The translations under genes were made by a program, and so were the position numbers. Positions 28,309 to 46,400 of a DNA stretch of 64,000 nt are shown here, in pieces. This DNA is from Lepidodermella squamata (taxonomy: Eukaryota > Animalia > Gastrotricha). Position 1 is the stretch's first letter. Every line of letters starts with the position of its first letter. Where the stretch lies: contig JBLDXI010000002.1 of assembly GCA_047495785.1 (NCBI GenBank), positions 2,108,001 to 2,172,000 on the forward strand. The letters are read 5' to 3'. Under the pieces are notes generated by a model. It saw only the letters and a list, made by a program, of their open reading frames with translations. It was not told the DNA's origin and did no database searches.

Positions 28309-29433
28309 CTAGTAAACTTCAGGTTCTGGTGCAAAGTCGCTTTTGGAAACATTTGATAAAGAAAATTCGGGATGGTTTCTAACCATGTTGATCAGCTCAG
28401 AAGGAGGTATCTGGCGAGTGCATATTTTAAAAACGGCAGTGAATACGGGAAATTGTTTCTCAAAACCGCGTCGTTTTACAATCAAATTAATTTCAGCTGC
28501 AGTATCCGGGCCTTGCAAATGCTGACCATTCAGAAGCTCCTTCTCCAGTTCAACGATGGACTTCTCAGGGTTTTTCGCAAACGCTGCAGCAACGAGATGG
28601 TTTCTTCCACCATAACAAGTAGCAATCAAGTCGGCGACCCCAGAAGACTGATAGAACGTCCGAAGATTAGTACCAGGGTGGAAGAGTTCGACAAACTTGA
28701 TGATTTCCATGAAGCCCAAGCGAATTATTGTTGCTTTAGTGCGTGAAGTCTGTCCGAGGCCGTCAGCCAAGCCAGCAGCAACAGCTACGACGTTCTTCAA
28801 AGCTCCACATAATTCAACGCCGCCGACGTCAGGTACAGTAGTAATGCGGAAGTAGTTTGCTTCGAATAGCTTCTTCATCAATACTGCATCGTCTTTATTC
28901 GATGATGCGATCGTGGCTTCGCAAAAAAATTCAGCTGCTACTTCGTTAGCGATGTTCGCACCCATCAACACAGATACGCGGATACCCAACTGCTCCTTAA
29001 TCATCTCTGAGATAAGTTGCATGTGCGTCTCAGTTGCAATAACACCTTTCACCAGGGAAATTCCTATTGCATTCGGAAGAATTTTGTGTTTGATTTGAGC
29101 GATTGTGTTGGGCAGGAACTGATGCGGCACACAAAACACGAGAATCGATGCATTTTTAACGGAGTCCACGAGGCTCGGAATTGCTACCACATTTTCAGGA
29201 AGCTTTACACCGGGAAGGTACTTGACATTAATGTGATCGGTATTGATAATGTCAGTAATTTTCTCGCCATTAATCATTTCTTCGAAAACCCACTCAGCGA
29301 CAATTGGCTCAAATAGGTCTGGGTATTTCAGACAATTGTCACCAACAATGCGGCATATGGCAGACGCCCAGTTGCCAGATCCAATAATGCAAACCTTACG
29401 AGGTTTCGAATATTTTGGCTTGTATTCCCCCAT
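28309..29433 (-). CDS. GPD1: NAD-dependent glycerol-3-phosphate dehydrogenase, intronless
   Basis: Motifs KVCIIGSGNWA, WVFEE, NVKYLPG, VPHQF, SLVKG, LMGANIANEVA, CGALKNVVA, DLIATCYGGRN, QGP. Confidence 0.95.
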   Translation of the reverse strand: MGEYKPKYSKPRKVCIIGSGNWASAICRIVGDNCLKYPDLFEPIVAEWVFEEMINGEKITDIINTDHINVKYLPGVKLPENVVAIPSLVDSVKNASILVFCVPHQFLPNTIAQIKHKILPNAIGISLVKGVIATETHMQLISEMIKEQLGIRVSVLMGANIANEVAAEFFCEATIASSNKDDAVLMKKLFEANYFRITTVPDVGGVELCGALKNVVAVAAGLADGLGQTSRTKATIIRLGFMEIIKFVELFHPGTNLRTFYQSSGVADLIATCYGGRNHLVAAAFAKNPEKSIVELEKELLNGQHLQGPDTAAEINLIVKRRGFEKQFPVFTAVFKICTRQIPPSELINMVRNHPEFSLSNVSKSDFAPEPEVY

Positions 29434-30662: not shown

Positions 30663-32347
30663 ATGCCCACGGTGAAGCCTGCAGCGACTAAACCTGCAGC
30701 CAAGAAAGTTGTTGATCCCGTTTCTTGGGCTGCATTTTCAGCTACTTTGAAATATGGCTCGAATTTAACTCTGGAGTTGAAAGGCTTTCGACCCATCTCT
30801 GCAGGAGATAGCATTAAAGTTTTGACTAGTGCCAAGCAGTATCCGCGATTCGCCGATGTCTTCAATAACGAAAACGTTTTCTGTTCATTTCAAGAGAGCC
30901 CCGAGTACGTTTTGAAGATAACGGCAAGATTTTCTTCAAGCTGCAGAGTAGCTTCTGTGGCTATAAATCATGCCGCTGAAGTCAACCTGAAGCTAGTCGA
31001 GGGTGTGAATCAAAAGTTATGTACAGTATGGTCAATCCGTCCAGGGCTGTCAGATACTTCTTACCCTGTCGATCAACGGCGACCTTGTTCGGCCATAGTC
31101 ATCACGGTCATTCCTTCATCTTCTGAATGGTCTGTCGAAACGTCAATTTCTGTGCAGGATAACACATCAACTGTCGAGAATGCAGCAGAAACTGCGAGGA
31201 GTCTCGCGCTCTTCGAAAGCGTTCCTTTGGACATTGTGCGCCATATTTTGACCTACATCAGCCCGCCACAACGGCTTCAAGTATTACAGAAGGATTGCTA
31301 AATTAAGAATTAGCTTATTTAATATCGTTTTAGACATTGTTAGCTCTATCCGGCTCATGCAGACATTTCAGAGACATATTGAAAGGATCCGAGTTTTGGA
31401 ATTCTGTTGATTTTCAAGCCCATGCTCTAAAACCTCCGAGTGAGCATTGCTATGGATTCCTTGCCAAGCATTCTTCGGTAGTAAAGCATCTCAACTTCGC
31501 TGCGATTACTGTGAGATGAGAATACTTTTCAAGTTACTTCATAAGTTACTTTCAACAGGCGTTTCCAGCACCCTCCATTTCGAAACTATTCAGCGGAGCT
31601 TCATTACTAACAACCCTATCTTTCCGAGATAGCCCCTGTTTTGACGACATTTTCCTGGACACGTTATTAAAGTGCCAGTCTTTGAAGCAAACTGTGGAAA
31701 CGCTGAATATTTCTGGATGCTCGAAGCTGACCGTGAAGGGCTTACCAAAGATAGCGCAATTCAAACATTTAATTCGCCTGGGCATGGCTCGGTTGAACGT
31801 TGATGCCAAAGGCATCCTTTCAAAAATTGTGATGGAACTGAAGAGGTTGGAAGTTCTGGACCTCGAGCAATCCAAAATTTCCGATTTCAATGACTTCCTA
31901 TGCGATTTTGCCAAATTTCCTGCGAGATCCACCCTGCGATATTTACGTCTTGGTAACGGATCAACGCTGGGCACGAGTGGTTTTATTGCTATTTTCAACA
32001 ACTGCTGTGCGCTGGAAGGAATTCACATTGACTGGCCATTTAAACGGCCTGACATTTTCGAGCTGAATCCGCCCAAGTCTAAAATAAAGTGGCTTTCGAT
32101 GAATCAGGCTTACTCGGAGGATTTCGAAGTATTTCCGAAATTTATGCCTGATCTCGAAGTTCTGGAGATTCGAGAAAACTCAGAAATAGACGTCTCACAA
32201 ATAAAATCAGTGCTGGAAAATTGCACTAGATTATCTGCTATTTACGTCGATAAGAAAGCAAAGATAACACCAGATACTGCTGACTTTCTTCGGCTTAACT
32301 CGGAGCAACCAAAATGCAAATTTATTCTTAATGATTATTCGAAATGA
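30663..32347 (+). CDS. F-box / leucine-rich repeat protein (FBXL-like), 3 exons
   Basis: Exons 30663-31280, 31334-31510 and 31559-32347 in frame. F-box LFESVPLDIVRHILTYI...LSGSCRHFRDIL...FWNSVDF. LRRs TLNISGCSKLT, LKRLEVLDL, LRYLRL, LEVLEI. Confidence 0.85.
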
Positions 32348-32498: not shown

Positions 32499-33332
32499 AT
32501 GGCTGCGACCTTGGGAAATATTTTGATTTCTGGCGCTAATCGTGGCATCGGTTTGGAACTTGTCCGCCAGGCTGCGCCGAATGCCAAAAATTTCATTTTC
32601 GCCGGCTGCCGAGATCCGCAACAGGCGAATGAATTGAAAGATTTAGCCGGGAAGCATTCCAATATTCTACCTTTCAAGCTTGGTAAGATGTCCAATTACT
32701 ATTAAAATCATCCTAAATTATTTCGGATTTTAGATGTCGCCAATGATCACGACATCGATGAAGCTGTAAAATTAGTTGCTGGAAAAACTGGTCACTTGAA
32801 CGTTCTTATCAACAACGCTGGAATTTTCGAAGATCGAGGCAGCTCTCTGGCGGAGCAAAATCGCGATACTTTGAACAAGCATTTTAACGTCAACACGACT
32901 TCAGTCATAATGATGACCAAGGCATTCCGAGATTTGCTGGTTAAAGGCAAGGTTCAGAGCCAGAAAGAATCAAAAGTGATCAATGTCGGCAGCGAAATGG
33001 GTTCGATCGTGAACACTAGTACCAAGTCATACGCTTATCGCTCTTCGAAAACTGCTTTGAACATGGTTTCGAAGTGCTTGGGCAATGAGCTGGGCCCTGA
33101 AGGCGTATTCTGCGTTTCGATCCACCCTGTTAGTCATCAGTTAATTCCTATTTTCTAGAATAATTTCGGATTTTTATCGTTTTAGGGCTGGACTCAAACT
33201 GATATGGGCGGCGCAAATGCTCCAGTCAAGACCACAGACAGTGTTGCTGGTATTTTGAAGGTTACCGCGGAGCTTTCAGCTGAGCAGAACGGCAAATTTG
33301 TCGACTACTTGGGCGAATATCGTCAATACTAA
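32499..33332 (+). CDS. Short-chain dehydrogenase/reductase, C-factor (CsgA)/sniffer-like, 3 exons
   Basis: Exons 32499-32682, 32734-33128 and 33186-33332. Motifs ISGANRGIGLE, LINNAGI, catalytic YRSSK, HPGWTQTDMGG. Confidence 0.92.
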
Positions 33333-33479
33333 CTTGCATCCTAATTCAAAATGTTGTCGCGATGATTCTTTATTTTTTTTCCTGGTGAGAAATATCACGT
33401 GCTACTCATCTGGTGAAACATTCAATTCTAAAATAAAATATTAAGATGGCAGTATTATACACCAAGGCAGTAACTATAT

Positions 33480-34889
33480 CTATATCGCAGAATCGGCAGG
33501 GCGCAGTAAGGTGACTTGAATAAGCGACTCTTTTGCGATGCCGTAGTCACCTAAAGTCCGACTCGGTTCGGACAGCTCGCGGCCTGCAAAAAACAGCCGC
33601 TGATCACAGCAAGGAAAGCCTCTCAATCGTTCAATAGTTTTCTTGAAGTTTTCCACAGTTTCAGTTGTAGCTGACCAAAGTACATCGACGCCGTCTGTTT
33701 AAAGGTAAACGTAAAATTGGAGCGAAAAAGTAGTGTATCAATTACTTGGCGGTGGAAATGCCACGCAAACCATGACATCAGACGTTTCGACGACAGTTAA
33801 GGCGGCTCCATTTTGGACATTGCTTGAAGCCAAGGTGGAGCCATCTTTCAGCCGGCGCCCGTTGTGGAACAGGGCAGACCAACCTTTTGAGGTTATCCCT
33901 GCCCTCTTTTTGACAGTCTCAACTGTATCTGATGATCTCACGTCGAGGAAAGAGCAAGATTCTGGAAATTGAAGAAATTTAATTAATTTGAATAATAAGC
34001 TTAATACATACTGAAAGGTTTGTTGACGGCAATTTTCAGCTCTTTTCCGAACGATGACTCCAGAAGTCGTAATGTTTCCTCAACTACTGCCCAGCCAACA
34101 GGAAGGGTATCGATTGCCGTGCGAATTATTACTCCGGAGCAATTTATCAAGAATACACCCCTGTTGTCGTAGAACACCTCAAAATCAGTATATTCTACTC
34201 GTAATTAATTACCTGATAGGTTCCATGTTGGAGTTAACAGCTCCATATCGTTTTGCGATTTTCGCGCCTTTATCTAACCCTAGTATAATATCAAGATTCC
34301 CAATGCCTCCTCGTTCACGAGGCGTTCGAGTTCTGGAATAAAATCTCGATAATTAGGGCTTAATAAGCATAATATTCGCATACAAAGTTTTCAGGCGAAT
34401 TTCCGAGTCTGATGACAGCACAATCACCTCACAGCCTTGATTCCGAAATCGCAAGGCGTGATCATTGAATGCCAGAATCTCTTGTGGAACAACATATTCT
34501 CTATAAATAAAAATCGGATAAACGTAAAACTGGAACATTCGAATCACTAACATATCAACGGGACAGAAAAATAGCAAGACGTGTGATCTGCTGATGTAGT
34601 CCTCCAGGGTAACAATGGACTGACGTTCGCCATCGGCGACAGTACGCGCAACAAAACCTGGCGCCGGAAAACCAGTTTTAACACCTACAATTAAAATTTA
34701 ATATTTTCGTACCAGTAAAATAAACAATTATAGGTACTCACCGCTTGGTTCGTTATTTGATATTACATCCTCTTCCTCATCGTTACCACGATCGAAAATA
34801 GTCACGCGTTTTGACCGAGAAGGTGACTGTTTGGGAGAGGGGGAGAGATAGTTGGAAGGATCACCGCCTATTAACCTTCGCGATCCCAT
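33480..34889 (-). CDS. Pseudo-peroxiredoxin (AhpC/Prx1 fold) fused to two ubiquitin-like domains, 7 exons, 365 aa
   Basis: Exons 34889-34742, 34684-34552, 34500-34384, 34332-34213, 34160-34012, 33961-33746 and 33694-33480; all introns GT-AG, 50-57 bp, total 1098 nt in frame. Prx motifs GFPAPGF, VLLFFCPVDIEYVVPQEILAF, TPRERGGIG, IRGVFLI, LPVG. Followed by two UBL domains (SDTVETVK...LFHNGRRLKDGSTL; ETVENFK...DQRLFFAGREL...RTLGDYGIAKES). Confidence 0.85.
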
Positions 34890-35559
34890 TCGTCATTCAC
34901 AAATTTTTCGCAGGCAGTCGTAAAATAAATTTTTGTACACAATCGTTAAAATGTCATGCAATCTACGGTTCAATTACAGCTCCTGCGAGAATGCATTGCG
35001 ATCAGCTAATGCGCGCCTTAAATAAAGAAAATTAGCGTGCAATAAAAAATTTATAACGGAGAGCGATATGGATGCCGCTTGTTCAATAGCTTGAGATCAA
35101 ACAAAACTGAATAAACTTGAGGTAAATATCGCGGGTAAATTCTTGCAACGCCAAAATCTCTTTTAGCCAAAGAGTGATCCGCAAGAAAAAACGGCATCAT
35201 TACACTAAGCGTTTACCATGACATAATTCGTCTGTTCGTCTCTAATTAGCAAATCCATCATTAAATTTTTCAAACAGAGTAAAAGAAGTCAGAAACAGGT
35301 ATTAAACCGACATTTTTGAAAAACGATTCACCTCTGTTTCTTTCGAATTTTCTTCGGTGAAATGGAAGAAATGGACACAACTTGCTTCGGTAGAACTCAG
35401 ATTTTGCAAAAATAACCAATTCTCAGCTGTAGGCAAAAGCTCACAATGTACTAGTTGTGAATTTGAAATTTGAAATTTGAAATTGAAATTTGAAAGTTGT
35501 GAATGTGTGTTGAAGTTGTCACAATGTAACCTCGCTTTCTCACAGAGGAGCTTCGATCA

Positions 35560-37469: not shown

Positions 37470-40400
37470 ATGAGCTCCAAGATCCGTGTCGGAGTCCGTA
37501 TCAAGCCTGTAAGGTAAGTTAATTGTCCCCATTCTGCTTCGAACAATGCTGATTCCTCGTTCGCAATCTGCTTTATATTCTTAGCGCTTCGATTACGGTC
37601 CCTGTTTCGGTCTCTAAACAAACTCGATCGATAACTATTACAGACATCTCAACTGGTCGTTGTGTTTCCCAGTTTCCCTACGGTTAGTCTTAACAATCGA
37701 CACATTATCCATTCGAACATTTCGCTGTCTTTTAAGATCATGTATTCGGCCCATCCGATGATACAACTGCAGTTTACAGTGGTCTTGCCAAAGATATTGT
37801 AATAAATGCCGTTAAAGGCTTCAATGGTAGGCTACGAGCGCGAAAAGTTATCGAATCTTCACTATTAAAAACTAATTTTTCTTAGGAACGATTTTTGCTT
37901 ACGGCCAAACTTCTTCCGGGAAGACTCACACCATGATTGGCGACAACTCCAATCCTGGCATCGTCCGCCAGGCTCTCCTTGACATCTTTGACTCGATCGA
38001 AAAAGTTTGCGAAGAATTTTAGGTTACATTTTGACTGTATTTCCCAATCTTGATTTAGTCACCCGACCGAGTTTTCTTACTGCGGTTATCTATTCTCGAC
38101 ATCTACAACGAAGTTTTGACTGATTTGCTTGATCCAAACTCAGCCAAGCTCACCATACGAGAAAATTCCGTAAGTCTTGCCCGTTCATGTTAGGCGATTG
38201 GCTGAAAATTTTAATTCAGGACGGAACTATCTTTGTCGAAAACTTATCCGAAGAAATCTGCACGTGTCCGGAGGATATCTTGCGATATTTAAACGACGGT
38301 CTTGGTATGTAATTTCTATTTTATATCAGTCGAAATCATGGAAATATTTGGTTTTTAGCTCGGCGTCATGTTGGCGCTACAAATATGAACGAGTATTCCA
38401 GTCGTTCGCATACCATTTGCCGTCTTATCATTGAAAGCCGACCGAAGGAAGAAGAGGGTGTTGTCAATGTTTCTCAATTGGTGAGATAGATGATTCTGTT
38501 TGATTTTATTCTTGCAAGCAATTGTTTGATTCTATCTTAGAATTTTGTCGATTTGGCTGGTTCAGAGCGCGTTGCTCACACCGGAGCTTCTGGGGAGCGA
38601 TTGAAGGAGGGCCAGGCAATTAACAAAAGTCTTTTCTTGTTGACTCTAGTCATTTCAAAGCTCAGTGAAGGGAGGCAAGTTATTTCATTAGATTTGATTC
38701 ACAAGATTTCATGTTTGCGAATTTTAGTACCTTCGTAAATTTTCGCGATTCAAAGCTCACTCGCATTCTTCAAAATGCGCTTGGTGGGAATTCATTGACC
38801 GCAATTGTCTGCACCGTGACCCCTGCGATAAATTTCCTCGAGCAAACTCTGAGCACCCTGAAATTTGCAACAAGCGCTAGCAATATCAGCACCAAGCCAA
38901 CGTTGAACGAGAATGTGTCGAGCGAAGCTTTGATGAAACGCATGCAACAAGAAATTGCTGAACTGCGAGCCAAAATCAAACAATTTGAGTCGACTGATCA
39001 GGGTGAAATCGCGAAAAAAGAGCTCGCTGAGAAGGAACTGTTATTCCGCGACGCAATTTGTTTCTCAACTCGAGCCACGCTTTTGGAGAAACCTGCGAAG
39101 AATTTCCGCCGCCTCACCTGGGCACCGCGCGATCGATGCCACGCTTTGACCATTACAGATGACGAGGCTGGGCCGCCGCAGCGCGTTGGTCCTGGTTCAG
39201 CAGTCAAACGAGATCTTGAATCGATTCTGGGTCGTGGCGGCGATAACAATCAAGGAGACTTGTCTCGGGTTGAAAGCAGCTCAAACAAACGATGCCGCCG
39301 TCGTGAGGTGATTTTCCGTGTACCGGTCGAAAAACCTATCGAAGAGAAGGACGAGCCCGACGAGTTGAATTCATCGAAGAACAGCGACGAGGTTCAGGCA
39401 ATAACCGATTCGGCTAATCGAAACGGAGTGGCTACTGGCATATTGGTCGATATCACAGATCCGGTTTCATTCAGATCAGCTGCTACCTCTCCGATTTTCT
39501 TCCCCGAGGTCGCGGAGAAAGTTGACAAAGAAGTTCAAAACGACGTCACTGGTTTGTTGCTAACTTACTAATTTTCTCATTGTTAATATAATTTATTGAA
39601 AAACCAGAAAAAATTGACAAGGAAACCCAGAATGAGCAAACTGGTATGAAATCTAGATTGAGAACCCAATAATTCTTCAAAATTTTATATTTTTTTAGAA
39701 ACCGATGATTTGTTCACGATTGGGCGCGAGATTTTCTTGGAAAATTCTGTCGCGCATTTCGAAGCTCGCGAAGAAATCGTCAAGTTGGAGTGTGAAATTC
39801 GCCGCTTGTCTGATGAAAACTCCGAAATGCGTTCGAAAATCGGTCAAACCAGCGAACCAATGGCTGACGATCGCAATGACAGCTCGCAACTGGAATCGGA
39901 AATCCGGCGACTTTCAGAGGAAAACGCGTCGCTTCGACAGAAACTTGAAGCGAACCCCGAACCAATGGTTGTTTCGCAATCTGCGTCCTGTGACAAGTGC
40001 CGCAACTTGGAGGATGAATTCGCTAGTATCAATGCTCGCTACTCGTCGTTGAAAAATAAGTACGACCAAGTTGTAGCCGCTTTGGACGAAGAGCGGAATT
40101 CGAAAAGTGAATCCGGGATAGCTGCGTCGAAGGAAATGTTGGAGGCAGCTTCGAAGCGATCTGCCGAGCTGGAAGAGCAGCTCAAATCTCAAAATGGTCG
40201 ATTTCAAGAATTGGAGAGCCAGTTATCACTGAATTCGGCTATGACGTCAGATCTCGAGCTTCAAATTTCTGCCCTGCGGGAATCGCTTGAAGTTTCTGAG
40301 AAAGAAAAGTCGAGTCTTGCATCGAAAATCGAAGAATTTTCGCAAGAAATCGAAACGTGGAAGGGGTCTTTCGAGAAAATTGAAGCAGAGCTGGCCGAGT

Positions 40401-43400
40401 CCTCGCAGTCGAATGCTGAGATTAAACGCCAATGTGACGATTTGGTCGCCGAAAAGAATCGCTATTTCGAATCAGCCGAAAGCGAGAAGCGTGATTTTGG
40501 CGATAAACTAGGTGAATCTGAGCGACGTGAGGCCGAAAAATCTGCTGAAATCGAAGAATTGAAGGCGAAAATTGCGGCGATTGAGCAAACCGAAGCCGAG
40601 ACGAGGCTGAAATACGAAGACCTATTCAACGAAAAGAATCAGTTGCTTCAAACTCGAGACGCTATCGAGGGTGAAAAACGTGAATTAATGGCGAAAGTAA
40701 TTGAATTCGAACAGCGGGAGGTTGGTTCGAGCGAGAAATTTACCGAAATCGAGAACATTCTGTCGGAAAATAACGCCGAAAAATCGTCTCTTATCGCCGA
40801 AATCAATGATTTGAAATCTAAGATCGACCAAAGAGAGGCTGAGTTGAATGAAAAATTGAACGAATTGACCGATGAAAGAAATCTACTTCTCCAAAATCGA
40901 GATTCCATCGAAGCTGAGAAACAGGAGCTTAGCGCGAAAATTTCCGAATTCGAAAGGCGTGAATCCGAATTAGCACATCAATTGGCCGAAGTTCAAAGCA
41001 CCTTGACTGAAACTGCTGCTGAGAAATCTTCGATTTGCGAAAAGCTGGAGGAGGAAATCGCTAAGCTGCAATCAAATCTCGAAAACGCGTTAAATGAAAC
41101 GGCTAAAATTTCCGCTGAGAAAGTCGATCTCAACGACCAATTGGCCCAAGTTCACGAGGAACTCGTTTCAATGAAGGAATCTCGTCACACTCTCGAATTG
41201 CGGGTTAAAGAGTTGGAGGATTGCGAGGGCATTTTGAAGAGCCAAATCGCTGCTTTGGAGGGCGATGCCGATGAGAAGGTGACCAGTTTGGCACGCGAAA
41301 AAACCGAATTAGCCGAGGAAGTCGTCCGACTTCAAGCTTCGATAACCGAATCAAACCTGAACAACGAGGCTCTTTTAGAAAAATTACGTGAGGAAATCGA
41401 GAATCTAAAAACATCTGTCGCCAATTTGAAAATGGAGAAAGAAGAGACTGAGGCGAAGTTCCAGTTGAGTTCCGAGACTCATCAATCGATTTTGTCCGAG
41501 CTCGAGCTTAATTTGAAGGCAGTCGAGTCTGAGAAAACTGCTCTAATTTCTCGCCTGGACGAAGCTACCGCACAGATTTCAGCGATTGAGCAACAAAAAT
41601 CTGAGCTTTCAGCCAAAATTGAGGCCTTTGATCAAGAAAAACAATCGATTGAATCTCTGTTGGCAATTTCGAAGCAGCAAGTTGAGGCGTTGGAATCTGA
41701 GAGGAGTTCCATGCAAGATCGAATCAATGAGTTGCAGCAAATTGAATCCGCACTATTGTCCACGATTTCGTCCTCGAGTGACGAAAAAAGCGATGAAATC
41801 GTCAAACTCGAGCAGGCTCGAAGCGATTTGGCTAGCCAAGTTGAGACTATGAAAACATGTATGGCCGAGTTGGAGAGCCAAGTAGACAAACTCCAGCGAG
41901 AAAACGAAGGCCTTCATGTGAAATTAGCCGATTTGGAGGAGAAACAGCTTGTCATTGAGCATGAGAAGGGCTGCCTAAGGTCTTCCCTCGAAGTCGCGCA
42001 TTGCCAGGTAGCGTCAGTTCAGGCCGAGAAAGCTGAGATCGAAGCTAAATTGGCCACTCTGATCGAATCAGCCGCCTTAATCGAAAGTGAAAAAGTTGAC
42101 CTGGCTAGCAAAATTTCTGAATTCGAGTTGAAGGAAGCGAAACTTCTTGAGCAATTCAACACTGAGAAAGAGGCTCTTGTCGCTAAAATTGCCGAGCTGG
42201 AAGAGAAATCTGCGGTTGATACAACCCAACATGATCCAGCGCAAATTTCAGAATTAGAGGCTGAAGTTGCTCGCTTGAACAAAGAATCAGCTGAAAAAGC
42301 GGAAGAATTCGATCTCATTCGGCAGGAAATCGATGCGTTGTTCGAAGAGAATCGCGATTTGAAGGCGAAATGCAAGAAACTTGAGGAAGATCTCGCTGAA
42401 AAATCTGGGAAATTCAACGAAAAATGCGAGCAATTTTCAGTTCTCGAGTCCGATGCCGAGCTGCTTCGCCAACAAATTTCTGTCGCTGATCAAGAACGGA
42501 AAATCTATATGAAGGAGTTGGAAGATGCTGGGCAAGAAGCTGCGAGGACTAAAATTCAACTCGAGAAACTGCAGGCGTTCATTTCAACTCAGACGAATGA
42601 AGTCGCCTGCAATACATCGCTGGCTAGTACCGCGAACGAATCGCGCACTTTTGTCAACACCCCGACCTACGGCGTTTCTCCGCCGAGAAAGACGCGACTC
42701 TCAGCTGTAATGCCTCGATTCAATTCGGAACTGATGCATTCTGATAAGAGTGATAAAAGCGACCATCCGGGTTGTGGTGATAAAACTGGGCTGTCGATGG
42801 TCGAAGCCTCTCCAGCCTTCTCCTCCCCGTTTTCAGTATCGACTATTACCGTAAAGGAAACACCGGCTAAGGCTAATTTGGCGCCGGACTGCTGTGAATC
42901 GTTCGCTCAAACTGAGGATGAATCAGTCGCGGCGATTATCAAGCGAATTCAACTGACGTCAGATTTTAAAGAGCGGTTCATTCTTAAGGCGGACTACGAC
43001 GAGGCTGTTCAGTCGTACCACACCACTGTAACTCTGTGGGATAAAATGCGGGAAAAATTGACGAATGAGAACGCGAAACTTCGCGATCGGGCCGATCGTT
43101 TGAGCGAGGCGGTTGGGCGGATTGTCGAGGGCGGCCAGTTGTCGCCCCTACCCACCCCTACCAGCACCAGTGTGGTGGATAAAACGACGTTAACTGCAAC
43201 TGGCGGTGATGTGACGTTAAGTGTTTCGACGACGGATGATAATATCGATGCGCTGTTGGGTCGATTGAGGATTTTCATGAAGGAGAAGGAAGACGCGGCT
43301 AGAAATGGCGTGTCACGTGAGCGTGATACGTGGTCCGAACAGGCGAAAGAGTTCGAGGAGGAAATTTCTAAGCTAAACAAAATCATCGCGAACTCGGAAC

Positions 43401-46400
43401 GGACTATTTCGGCGAAAGAAGATGAACTGAAGCAGTTGGCTCAAAAATTGAAGTAAGCTTTCTAGCCACTAGCCATGTACAATTACAAGCCCATGTATGA
43501 TATTAAGGTAGCTTTCATTTCACTACGGTAAAGAAATTCAAAAGGAGGCTTAAAGCCCTTAATAGCGAGCTTTTTGCAAAGAGGGAGATTAATTCAGAAA
43601 CGGGGCCAAAGTTAAACATTCTGCAATTTCTTTAGTTTTAAGAAGAAAGGAAATAATTGGTCAATTGATTTGTCTATTCGATTTTTCTTTGATTTGATTT
43701 GAAAATAATTCAGGTGAGCTAACTTGTAACTGATCAGAGCCTGTGAAGCTTGAAAAATTGCACACATTTAGTATTTTGCAGTCTTATCAGTCTCGAAAAT
43801 TGAGACTTTTTATTCAGAACTTGCGTGCCTTGAAAATCCATCTTAATTCGGCGTTATCTGGGAATGAGTAAAACTGCAAGAAATTTGAGGCCTTAAGATT
43901 TGATTAGCATGGCTCAATTCGTGCCTTTAATTTGAAATTTAATTTAATTAGAAAGTGGGACAACATTTCAAATGTCCTCATTTTCTGAAAAAATGAAACA
44001 ACTAGGTCGCTAAAAATAATTGCTAAATTTTGACAAAAAATATTTTGTGATTTCCGAAAAATATATCAGGTGGTTTCGAAATTTCTAAGGTATTACGGGT
44101 TTCTTCAATTTCGACTCATTTCGAGGGATTATTTTACTCCTCAGGTCCTTCCCTAGCGATTAGGTTAGTAACGTATATTAAGGAGTCATATGAGCGATGG
44201 TAGAAAAGAAATTAAAGAATCGTAATTTTCTTGAATTTTTAATTTGACTTTGAATTTTAAGGTCGCTCGAATCCGATAGCGCGACGTCTCAGCAAGGATT
44301 AACCGAACTAAAAGCGACCCTGGCGGCGAAAACCGAGGCGTTACGCCAACGCGAGACGGAACTCGTCGACGTGAAACGATCGTTAGACGACCGCCAGACC
44401 GAAATCAAGCGCCTCCAGACCGAACTAGCCCTGACCACTGCGTCCCTCGTCGTCGCAGACCAGGGCCACAAGACGAGCGAGAAAGGCTTCGCCGTGTTAC
44501 AGGAGCAACTCAACATCGAAAAAACGAGCCGCGCCTCGGCCGAGTCGATTGTCAACGATTTGCAGGTGAAATTGAACCACGCTAGAGCTGAGGCTGATTC
44601 GTGGCGAGAACGCGCTTGCCTTCATGAGGATGAAGGTAACCGCTTGATTAATGAAGTGACCCGCCTTCAAGCGATGTTCGAAGCCGCGGAGGAACAAGCG
44701 CGGTCGATTTCGCAGGAGAGAAACGAAGCGCTATCGAAGTTGGAGTCGTTCGAAAGCGAACGTGCTCAGCTAAAACGAGAATTGACGACAACTCAGCAGG
44801 AATTGACAAAGCAGCAAATGCTGGTTGATTCGCTGACGAAATCAGTCGATGCGGGCCAGCAGAAGGTCGAGAAAGCTCGCACTCTGTTCAACACACTTCG
44901 CGACCAGATCAAGGAGTTGCAGACCCGAAATGATAAGTTGAAGGAGGAAAAGCGGACGGCTGTGCAATTTTTGACCGAAATGAAGGCCGATCGGGTTCAT
45001 CTTGAAAATTCTATCCGAGAATGGGCCGAAAAATGCGAGGTGATCGAGGTAGGTCGGCTTATTATTGCTTCGATTTTTCTTCGTTATTTCTTCGTATAAC
45101 TTTATTTTGAGGCATTGAAAGCTTAGAAATTGAAGGAATTAATTTGACATTTTTGAGAAATCCAATTTGAATTTGGGTCTTCCTTTTACCGGAACAAAAT
45201 TTACGGTGGGCGGAACCAAATTTTGGAATTTTTTAGTGGCCTGAAATCTCTTTTCGGATATTTCTTGCGGGTAAAGATTGACCACAATAATTCTACAAAA
45301 ATCACCGGTAAATTCAGCGTAGCATTCTCTATAAGACAGAGTGTTCAATTCAAAACTCATGCTTCGCCTCAAATTTGCAGAATTATTCAAAAATTAACTG
45401 CTGGCATATTTCGAATTTGGTTCCGCTAACGCAAATTAGGTTCCGCTAAAAGATATTCCGTTTGAATTTGATTCAATTTTCTTGAATTACTCAAAATTCC
45501 AAGACTTGGGCGAAAATTCCAGAACTATCATAGTAGGTATTCGAAAATTCCAAAAAATTTTTTCGATTTGCTCGGTAGCATTGTGGATGGAAGTTCATTT
45601 GAATTACGTCACCTAAAAATCATGATTTTCGCTGTTGTCCCGATTTATTTCCCAAATGAAAGAATAATATTAAGGCTGCTTTTTGTATTTCTTTGAAAAT
45701 TCATGAATAATTTTAGTCACATTTTCTTAAATCCCGTCATTTTATGAGCCTTTTCCCCGCTGCCCAATTATGTTTTCGAGATTTTCGTGATAAAATTTCA
45801 CTCTCAATCCTATCGGGCGAAATAAACAAAATATGGCCCTGAAATTCCAGCTTAATTTCGAACCAGAATTTAGCCGTATTTCTCTTCAATTTGAACCATC
45901 GCCAATATTTTTTATATTATTTTGAATCAACAAAAAATCACATTTGAATTCGATAATACTCCATCGATCAGTTCAAAACGAATTTTTCAATTTCTTAGAA
46001 TCGATGCAAGGTGCTGAAACAAGAGCGCGATGCGTCGGATCAAGCCATGCAAGACTCGCGAAAAGAGCTGCGAGTAGCCCGCGACGAGCTGCAAATGTTC
46101 CACCGCGACTTGACGCAGCGACTGCTCGACCTCGGCAAGGCGTGGCGATTGTGCCTCACCAACGCCGGCATGCCGGTGAGCGAGGCGACCGAGTCGGACC
46201 CGCATCACCTCATTAAGGAGGTGAAATGGACGAGCAAGCACTCGGTCGCCAAGATCGACCCTGTTCACGCGCTGCAGGGCCTTGGCGTGACCTGCGAGTG
46301 GCTGTACAACGAAGCTCATCAGCAAATCTCGGTGTTGGAAAGCACGCGGCGGCAGACACTGGCCCGAGAGCGCAGCGCGGCCGAACACGCGGAGAAACTT

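What the first reader, a model, noticed from the sequence alone, without database searches (positions are those of the whole stretch)
33480..34889. Catalytically dead peroxiredoxin fused to a tandem di-ubiquitin-like tail
Seen: seven exons give an intact 365-aa frame. The Prx1 active site FYPxDFTFVCPTE has become FCPVDIEYVVPQE, so the peroxidatic Cys is Val and the Thr is Glu, with a new Cys at the Tyr position. The catalytic Arg (IRG) is kept and PVGR has become PVGW. The resolving-Cys tail is replaced right at the domain end by two ubiquitin-like domains with no terminal GG. Known: tandem non-conjugatable UBLs on an inactive enzyme occur in human OASL; Prx oligomers also act as chaperones and as immune danger signals. 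Inference: a pseudoenzyme that displays UBLs, possibly by co-assembling with Prx rings, and links redox state or Prx clients to the proteasome or to ubiquitin-binding receptors. The architecture is unfamiliar to me.
Basis: partly seen in the sequence, partly recalled or inferred. Interest (0 to 1): 0.85.

Follow-up and report, generated by a model that had tools for sequence, protein, structure and literature searches.

The report
Dead peroxiredoxin with two ubiquitin-like domains
An animal gene encodes a peroxiredoxin that has lost its catalytic residues and carries two permanently attached ubiquitin-like domains; natural selection is clearly preserving it, but no transcript or relative in another species could be found.

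Summary
On the minus strand, seven exons (34889-33480) joined by six GT-AG introns of 50-57 nt give an intact 365-aa frame. Exons 2-5 match typical 2-Cys (Prx1/AhpC-type) peroxiredoxins colinearly. The peroxidatic Cys is Val98, the motif Thr is Glu95, the second Arg is Trp196, and the resolving-Cys arm is absent. Residues 214-360 align in one piece with head-to-tail di-ubiquitin, and neither domain ends in GG.

The fusion does not depend on a splice junction. Exon 5 alone encodes the last Prx helix and the first strand of UBL1.

It is not a decaying copy. Against a second haplotype in a DNA run, 15 of 16 itemised exonic differences are synonymous (pN/pS 0.023, P 1.4e-8). All 11 listed indels lie outside the coding frame.

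Weak points:
- There is no RNA evidence. The only RNA-like run that holds the neighbouring GPDH gene was not listed for this gene.
- No ortholog was found, but the lineage is barely represented in the databases.
- The spliced protein has no reference, so whole-protein searches and structure prediction were not run.

The adaptor mechanism is inference. I rate it a new variant of a known kind (an inactive enzyme with a tandem UBL tail, as in OASL), of moderate interest.

The parts
33480..34889 (-). Whole coding region: seven exons, six GT-AG introns, 365 codons plus a TAG stop
   Evidence: model; intron lengths and GC
34742..34889 (-). Exon 1: ATG and a roughly 50-aa Ser/Pro- and acid-rich N-terminal extension with no family match. 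An in-frame TGA lies two codons upstream of the ATG.
   Evidence: two synonymous and no nonsynonymous haplotype differences
34058..34684 (-). Prx1/AhpC-type peroxiredoxin-like domain, aa 51-207, spread over exons 2-5
34479..34568 (-). Degenerate active-site motif FCPVDIEYVVPQE (aa 89-101), split by intron 2. Val98 (34490-34488) replaces the peroxidatic Cys, Glu95 replaces Thr, and Cys90 replaces Tyr.
34160..34214 (-). Arg173, the retained catalytic Arg. Its codon AG|G is split by intron 4 (bases 34214, 34213 and 34160).
   Evidence: the alignment starts at the next residue
34091..34093 (-). Trp196, in place of the second conserved Arg (PVGR to PVGW)
34012..34160 (-). Exon 5: one uninterrupted exon that encodes the last Prx strand and helix, a short linker (FGKE) and strand 1 of UBL1 (LKIAVNKPF). 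This makes the fusion independent of any splice junction.
33774..34039 (-). UBL1, aa 214-285, 32% identical to ubiquitin, ending VVETSDV with no GG
33498..33773 (-). UBL2, aa 286-360, 40% identical to ubiquitin in the global alignment (45-49% over the core in local matches). It ends LLRP followed by ADSAI; Pro-Ala stands in place of Gly-Gly.
33369..33374 (-). AATAAA, 108 nt after the stop: a candidate polyadenylation signal
   Evidence: sequence only
35050..35055 (-). TATAAA, 166 nt upstream of the ATG: a candidate TATA box
   Evidence: sequence only

Best explanation
This is a real, selectively maintained protein-coding gene. Its product has three parts: a disordered N-terminal extension of about 50 aa, a Prx1/AhpC-type peroxiredoxin fold that cannot perform thiol peroxidase chemistry, and a head-to-tail pair of ubiquitin-derived domains that can be neither cleaved off nor conjugated. 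The peroxidase chemistry is ruled out because there is no peroxidatic Cys, no motif Thr, no second Arg and no resolving-Cys arm. Up to this point the account is shown by sequence, homology and polymorphism. What follows is inferred. The protein most likely acts as a non-catalytic adaptor. The conserved Prx fold would serve as a binding or oligomerisation module, for itself, for canonical Prx1-type subunits or for Prx partners. The permanent di-UBL tail would serve as a docking signal for UBL/ubiquitin-binding proteins, in the manner of other proteins with integral UBLs. My confidence in the identity and reality of the gene is about 0.85-0.9. My confidence in the adaptor mechanism is about 0.35.
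For: The gene model is intact, with uniform short AT-rich GT-AG introns. There are colinear matches of about 42-49% identity to typical 2-Cys Prx in four exons, with E 1.7e-8 for exons 2+3 together. The catalytic positions are replaced. Both UBLs score above the Pfam gathering threshold. The tail aligns with di-ubiquitin in a single alignment at E 1e-17 with no linker. Exon 5 carries both Prx and UBL1 sequence. Purifying selection is strong: on the 743 exonic bases where every difference was itemised there are 15 synonymous and 1 nonsynonymous change. This gives pS 0.080, against 0.068 in introns, pN 0.0018, pN/pS 0.023 and binomial P 1.4e-8. All 11 listed indels lie in introns or flanks, except one inside the stop codon that still leaves a stop. 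Prx1-type subunits of different isoforms are reported to form heterodimers and heterodecamers (PMC13038412), which makes co-assembly conceivable.
Against: There is no transcript evidence. Run X1 is DNA. The RNA-like run X2 holds 95% of the words of the neighbouring GPDH gene but was not listed for this gene. No ortholog or paralog was found. The differences in 33453-33618 (9) and 33642-33846 (17) were not itemised, so the constraint on UBL2 and on the end of UBL1 is unknown, and their density (5-8%) is higher than in the Prx part. The Ile44-patch positions of ubiquitin are altered in both UBLs. Residues thought to be needed for the decamer interface appear changed. No binding partner was tested.
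Confidence: 0.55

Rival explanations
1. A young, lineage-specific chimeric gene that is not expressed or has no function: a prediction with a good frame but no biology.
For: No relative was found in any search. The one RNA-like run that holds the neighbouring gene was not listed for this one.
Against: pN/pS is 0.023 with neutral-site divergence of about 8%, and indels are confined to non-coding sequence. The database negatives are weak. Even the conserved neighbour GPDH finds nothing above 65% identity, and full-length relatives were outside the length range of the searches that could be run.
Confidence: 0.08
2. A redox-active protein that uses other cysteines (Cys90 next to the old active site, Cys117, Cys180, or the Cys323-Cys324 pair in UBL2) as a thiol sensor or relay instead of the canonical peroxidatic Cys.
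For: There are seven Cys in the protein. They include a new one at the Tyr position of the FYP motif and a CC pair in UBL2. Arg173 and Pro91 of the active-site pocket are kept.
Against: The position that activates the thiolate (first turn of helix 2) holds Val. The Thr that positions the peroxide is Glu, and the second Arg is Trp. A Prx1 mutant without its peroxidatic and resolving Cys had no detectable activity (PMC6617597). I know of no precedent for a shifted peroxidatic Cys at this position.
Confidence: 0.1
3. A Prx-fold holdase or scaffold whose UBLs mainly control its own fate (turnover, solubility or localisation) rather than recruiting clients to receptors.
For: Chaperone activity of Prx1-type proteins independent of the catalytic Cys is established knowledge, for example the Leishmania mitochondrial tryparedoxin peroxidase (from memory). 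The Prx core is the best-constrained part.
Against: Nothing here distinguishes this from the adaptor reading, and the oligomeric state is unknown.
Confidence: 0.15
4. An OASL-like signalling protein: the uncleavable head-to-tail di-UBL mimics a short ubiquitin chain and activates or blocks a ubiquitin-chain reader, for instance in innate immunity.
For: It has the same general layout as OASL, an inactive enzyme fold followed by two C-terminal UBLs (PMC8764230 is listed; the OASL function is from memory). The junction has the register of linear di-ubiquitin.
Against: The tail residues of the first unit (LRLRGG) and the surface patches that chain readers recognise are not conserved. There is no immune context in the neighbourhood: GPDH, an F-box/LRR protein, a short-chain dehydrogenase and a kinesin.
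Confidence: 0.1

Closest known systems
Typical 2-Cys peroxiredoxins (Prx1/AhpC subfamily; e.g. human PRDX2 1qmv, yeast Tsa2 5ept, PRDX3 5ucx)
   Same: The thioredoxin-fold AhpC-TSA domain matches colinearly at about 42-49% identity per exon. Pro91 and Arg173 of the active-site pocket are kept, and so are the strand GVFLIN and the helix EETLRLL.
   Different: The peroxidatic Cys is Val, the motif Thr is Glu, and the second Arg is Trp. The C-terminal arm with the resolving Cys is missing. There is an extra 50-aa N-terminal extension and a di-UBL tail.
OASL (2'-5'-oligoadenylate synthetase-like protein)
   Same: An enzyme fold without its activity, followed by two tandem C-terminal ubiquitin-like domains that lack a conjugatable end.
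   Different: The enzyme fold is unrelated (nucleotidyltransferase versus thioredoxin-fold peroxidase). There is no evidence here of interferon-type regulation or of a partner. The resemblance is one of layout, not of descent.
Polyubiquitin / linear di-ubiquitin, and ISG15-type tandem UBL proteins
   Same: Two beta-grasp units lie head to tail without a linker. A single alignment to di-ubiquitin gives 36% identity and E 1e-17.
   Different: There is no LRLRGG or GG at either end, so there is no processing and no conjugation. Most Lys and surface-patch positions are changed. The units are attached to another domain.
FAF1-type proteins (two tandem UBLs plus a cysteine-less thioredoxin-like UAS domain; from memory)
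   Same: A non-catalytic thioredoxin-fold module combined with two ubiquitin-like domains in one polypeptide.
   Different: The order of domains differs. The UAS domain is not of the peroxiredoxin type. FAF1 also has UBA and UBX domains, which are absent here. This comparison was not tested with tools.

Membership tests
Prx1/AhpC-type (typical 2-Cys) peroxiredoxin | Homologous AhpC-TSA thioredoxin-fold domain | tested here: met
   Exons 2-5 hit typical 2-Cys Prx chains colinearly. Exons 2+3 together give E 1.7e-8. Pfam AhpC-TSA on exon 3 alone gives E 4e-4, below the gathering score because only 35 of 124 profile positions are present.
Prx1/AhpC-type (typical 2-Cys) peroxiredoxin | Peroxidatic Cys in the PxxxTxxC motif | tested here: not met
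   FVCPTE aligns with YVVPQE. The Cys is Val98 and the Thr is Glu95; Pro91 is kept.
Prx1/AhpC-type (typical 2-Cys) peroxiredoxin | Conserved active-site Arg before the GLFIID strand | tested here: met
   Arg173 lies directly before GVFLIN, with its codon split by intron 4.
Prx1/AhpC-type (typical 2-Cys) peroxiredoxin | Resolving Cys in a C-terminal arm | tested here: not met
   The homology to Prx ends at LRLLES (chain residue about 160-163). UBL1 starts 7 residues later.
Prx1/AhpC-type (typical 2-Cys) peroxiredoxin | Thiol peroxidase activity; dimer and decamer assembly | not testable with these tools
   This needs recombinant protein. The spliced product could not be given to the structure tool because it has no reference.
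Ubiquitin-like (beta-grasp, PF00240) domains | Match to the ubiquitin family profile above the curated threshold, twice | tested here: met
   Exon 6 scores 29.5 bits and exon 7 scores 49.5 bits, against a cut-off of 25.4. The di-ubiquitin alignment gives E 1e-17.
Conjugatable ubiquitin-like modifiers (ubiquitin, NEDD8, ISG15) | C-terminal Gly-Gly exposed or exposable by processing | tested here: not met
   UBL1 ends ETSD and runs directly into UBL2. UBL2 has Pro360-Ala361 at the Gly75-Gly76 positions, followed by DSAI and the stop.
OASL-like layout (inactive enzyme plus tandem C-terminal UBLs) | Two C-terminal non-conjugatable UBLs after an enzyme fold that lacks catalytic residues | tested here: met
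   This is a resemblance of layout only.
OASL-like layout (inactive enzyme plus tandem C-terminal UBLs) | OAS (nucleotidyltransferase) domain homology | tested here: not met
   The N-terminal domain is of the Prx type, with no OAS match in Pfam.

The most novel reading that the evidence does not exclude
The dead Prx subunit co-assembles with canonical Prx1-type subunits into mixed dimers or decamers. The ring would then display a variable number of permanent di-UBL tags, and the redox-dependent assembly state of peroxiredoxin would be read out by UBL/ubiquitin receptors such as the proteasome. This would be a direct structural link between peroxide sensing and the ubiquitin system.
Probability: 0.12. 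Interest if true: 0.8.

Novelty: new variant of a known kind. Interest (0 to 1): 0.55.

Why it matters
Peroxiredoxins are abundant peroxide sensors. Their non-catalytic roles (chaperone, scaffold, signal relay) are hard to separate from catalysis. A naturally dead Prx1-type protein kept under strong purifying selection would be a natural separation-of-function variant. Its permanent di-UBL tail suggests a link to the ubiquitin system that is not described in the literature I could search. The case also shows a pseudoenzyme-plus-tandem-UBL layout arising independently of OASL. Its importance is limited for now by three things: it is known from one locus, it comes from a poorly sampled animal lineage, and there is no expression evidence.

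Tried and rejected
1. RNA evidence.

2. Ortholog searches.
- Exon 6 by word search found nothing.
- Exon 7 against 1.84 billion representatives was swamped by polyubiquitins, whose repeats add up in the score, and no protein of the right architecture was visible. This was a poor choice of query on my part.
- The stop-free stretch of exon 2, intron 2 and exon 3 found nothing.
- Metagenome scans with exons 7 and 5 found nothing.
- The top 150 ubiquitin hits contain no Prx-like domain.

3. Synteny. The exact GPDH product is not on record. The closest GPDH relative (65% identity, ENA metagenome contigs L001 and L002) has no Prx-UBL gene nearby.

4. Paralogs. There are none in the window.

5. Atlas searches with exons 5, 6 and 7 found only generic ubiquitin or thioredoxin-like clusters, none with both families.

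6. Literature. No paper holds both 'peroxiredoxin domain' and 'ubiquitin-like domain'. Other searches gave nothing on such a fusion.

7. Steps left out. The whole-protein search, the cluster look-up, AlphaFold and the fold search were not run. The spliced 365-aa product has no reference, and long sequences may not be typed.

8. Considered and rejected.
- A recent internal duplication of the UBL: UBL1 and UBL2 are only 29% identical, less than either is to ubiquitin.
- A PP1-docking RVxF motif in KRVTIF: it does not fit the consensus.
- N-myristoylation of Gly2: position 6 does not fit.

Full report
**The sequence**

Seven exons give 1098 coding bases, that is 365 codons and a TAG stop:

| Exon | Coordinates |
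|---|---|
| 1 | 34889-34742 |
| 2 | 34684-34552 |
| 3 | 34500-34384 |
| 4 | 34332-34213 |
| 5 | 34160-34012 |
| 6 | 33961-33746 |
| 7 | 33694-33480 |

The six introns are 57, 51, 51, 52, 50 and 51 nt long. All begin with GT and end with AG, and they are 20-33% GC against 48% in the exons. An in-frame TGA lies two codons before the ATG, so this ATG is the first possible start in exon 1. A TATAAA lies 166 nt upstream of the ATG, and an AATAAA lies 108 nt after the stop. The gene converges on a short-chain dehydrogenase gene whose last ORF ends at 33332. The window holds no paralog.

**The peroxiredoxin part**

The spliced protein has no reference, so each exon was searched on its own.

- Pfam finds AhpC-TSA in exon 3 (E 4e-4).
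- Against the sequences of solved structures, exons 2, 3, 4 and 5 each hit typical 2-Cys peroxiredoxins, in colinear order. In PRDX2 numbering the matches cover residues 6-45, 48-80, 87-119 and 127-160. Identity is about 42-49% per exon, counted from the printed alignments.
- The stretch of exon 2, intron 2 and exon 3 happens to be stop-free. Searched as one piece it gives E 1.7e-8 against PRDX2. The 17 intron codons fall exactly between PRDX2 residues 47 and 48, which independently confirms that splice junction.

The active-site motif FYPLDFTFVCPTE reads FCPVDIEYVVPQE here. The changes and retentions are:

- the peroxidatic Cys is Val98;
- the Thr of PxxxTxxC is Glu95;
- the Tyr is Cys90;
- Pro91 is kept;
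- the Arg before the GLFIID strand is kept as Arg173, with its codon split by intron 4;
- the Arg of PVGR is Trp196.

Homology to Prx stops at the helix EETLRLLES. The C-terminal arm that carries the resolving Cys in typical 2-Cys enzymes is absent. By the accepted Prx mechanism, a protein without the peroxidatic Cys cannot be a thiol peroxidase. A Prx1 mutant lacking both of its Cys had no detectable activity in PMC6617597.

**The ubiquitin-like part**

- Pfam's ubiquitin family matches exon 6 (29.5 bits) and exon 7 (49.5 bits), both above the 25.4-bit cut-off.
- A di-ubiquitin unit was cut from a polyubiquitin returned. The assembled model aligns to it in one piece: residues 228-357 on di-ubiquitin 15-147, 36% identity, E 1e-17, with no linker between the units.
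- The end-free global alignment starts UBL1 at Leu214 (LKIAVNK on MQIFVKT).
- UBL1 (214-285) is 32% identical to ubiquitin and UBL2 (286-360) is 40% identical. Over its core, UBL2 is 45-49% identical in local matches.
- Neither unit has Gly-Gly. UBL1 ends ETSD and runs straight into UBL2. UBL2 has Pro-Ala at positions 75-76, followed by DSAI.
- Positions of the ubiquitin Ile44 patch are altered. L8 is Pro in both units, I44 is Leu or Phe, H68 is Thr or Gln, and V70 is Thr in UBL2.

**The fusion is not an artefact of joining two genes**

Exon 5 is a single uninterrupted exon; the ORF 34001-34177 contains it. Its first 35 residues align with the last strand and helix of Prx. Its last nine residues are strand 1 of UBL1. 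The Pfam match in exon 6 starts at profile position 12, so those residues in exon 5 are needed to complete the domain.

**Selection**

The only run found for the locus, X1, is DNA. Its contigs cover the introns and there are no joints. It carries a second, strongly diverged haplotype (or a very recent copy).

For three contigs (33817-34167, 34237-34686, 34787-35122) the number of listed differences equals the number reported per contig, so the list is complete there. Of 16 exonic differences, 15 are synonymous and one is not (His255Tyr). One further listed difference, at 33627, is also synonymous.

| Measure | Value |
|---|---|
| Synonymous sites | 188 |
| Nonsynonymous sites | 555 |
| pS | 0.080 |
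| Intron divergence | 11/161 = 0.068 |
| pN | 0.0018 |
| pN/pS | 0.023 |
| Binomial P | 1.4e-8 |

All 11 listed indels lie in introns or flanks. The exception is a 4-base insertion inside the stop codon, which still leaves a stop.

This rejects the 'decaying copy' alternative for exon 1, the Prx-like domain and the first half of UBL1.

There is a limit to this result. The differences on the contigs that cover 33453-33618 (9) and 33642-33846 (17) were not itemised. Their density is higher than in the Prx part, so the constraint on the end of UBL1 and on UBL2 is unknown, apart from the absence of frame-breaking indels.

**Expression**

There is no positive evidence. As a control, the neighbouring GPDH gene was searched. 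An RNA-like run, X2 (2015, labelled as another organism code), holds 95% of its words. That run was not listed for 33400-35000, where a holder needs a twentieth of the words. A spliced transcript would keep roughly half of the words, so no assembled transcript of this gene seems to be in that run. I count it as a weak negative.

**Relatives**

None was found. This says little, for two reasons. First, the lineage is almost absent from the databases: the conserved, intronless GPDH next door finds nothing better than 55-65% identity, and its exact product is not on record. Second, the searches that could be run with single exons cannot see full-length relatives, or were swamped by polyubiquitin. 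The closest GPDH relative sits on metagenome contigs with no similar gene nearby. Literature searches found no description of a peroxiredoxin joined to ubiquitin-like domains.

**Mechanism**

What is shown:
- a conserved Prx1-type fold without its catalytic apparatus;
- a permanent di-UBL tail derived from ubiquitin;
- a disordered N-terminal extension;
- strong purifying selection on at least the first two thirds of the protein.

What is inferred: the protein is a non-catalytic adaptor. The Prx fold would bind or oligomerise. Mixed oligomers of Prx1-type isoforms are documented in PMC13038412, and the strand used for the dimer interface is well kept here. The UBLs would dock onto UBL/ubiquitin-binding proteins.

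Against a simple version of this reading, the classical recognition patch of ubiquitin is altered in both UBLs. The segment that holds the conserved His and Trp of the decamer interface in canonical enzymes reads LKTL here; the canonical sequence is from memory.

The rival readings are listed with their tests: an unexpressed young chimera, a thiol sensor using other Cys, a holdase whose UBLs control its own fate, and an OASL-like chain mimic.

**Comparison and verdict**

By descent it is a member of the Prx1/AhpC fold family, but it fails the family's defining catalytic features. I therefore file it as a Prx-like pseudoenzyme, not as a peroxiredoxin. Its layout resembles OASL, an inactive enzyme followed by two non-conjugatable UBLs, without any homology in the enzyme part. 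I rate it a new variant of a known kind.

The function, the expression and the taxonomic spread remain open. Interest is 0.55.

Noticed in passing
window 34012/33961 and 33746/33694 (introns 5 and 6): Both UBL units carry a phase-1 intron in the codon that aligns with ubiquitin Gly10 (Lys223 and Asn295). Exon 6 is exactly 72 codons, one repeat unit. Yet UBL1 and UBL2 are only 29% identical to each other, less than either is to ubiquitin. Either the intron predates an old duplication, or the source ubiquitin repeats already carried it.
   Followed up: partly
window 34501-34551 (intron 2): This 51-nt intron is stop-free and in frame. If retained, it would insert 17 residues into the active-site loop without breaking the reading frame (ORF 34353-34577).
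   Followed up: no
window 28312-29433 (-): An intronless 374-aa glycerol-3-phosphate dehydrogenase ORF in a genome otherwise full of roughly 50-nt introns. Its best database identity is only 55-65%. An RNA-like run holds 95% of its words. It may be a retrocopy that became the working gene.
   Followed up: partly
window 33200-35200: The DNA run X1 carries a second haplotype (or a very recent copy) that is about 7-8% diverged at introns and synonymous sites, with many small intron indels. This is unusually high heterozygosity.
   Followed up: partly
window 30663-32347 (+) and 32796-33332 (+): The neighbours are ordinary. One ORF pair looks like an F-box followed by leucine-rich repeats. There is also a short-chain dehydrogenase whose 3' end lies 148 nt from the stop of the Prx-UBL gene, in convergent orientation. 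These readings are from the sequence only.
   Followed up: no
window 38711-43456 (+): A kinesin-like gene with a single 1248-aa coiled-coil ORF, resembling CENP-E. It was not examined.
   Followed up: no
L001 and L002 (ENA metagenome contigs): Two near-identical 13-kb contigs from different samples hold the closest GPDH relative (65% identity), next to TIP49, metallo-beta-lactamase-fold and DENN/SBF2 genes. This appears to be a compact eukaryote, perhaps the nearest sampled relative of the window's organism.
   Followed up: no
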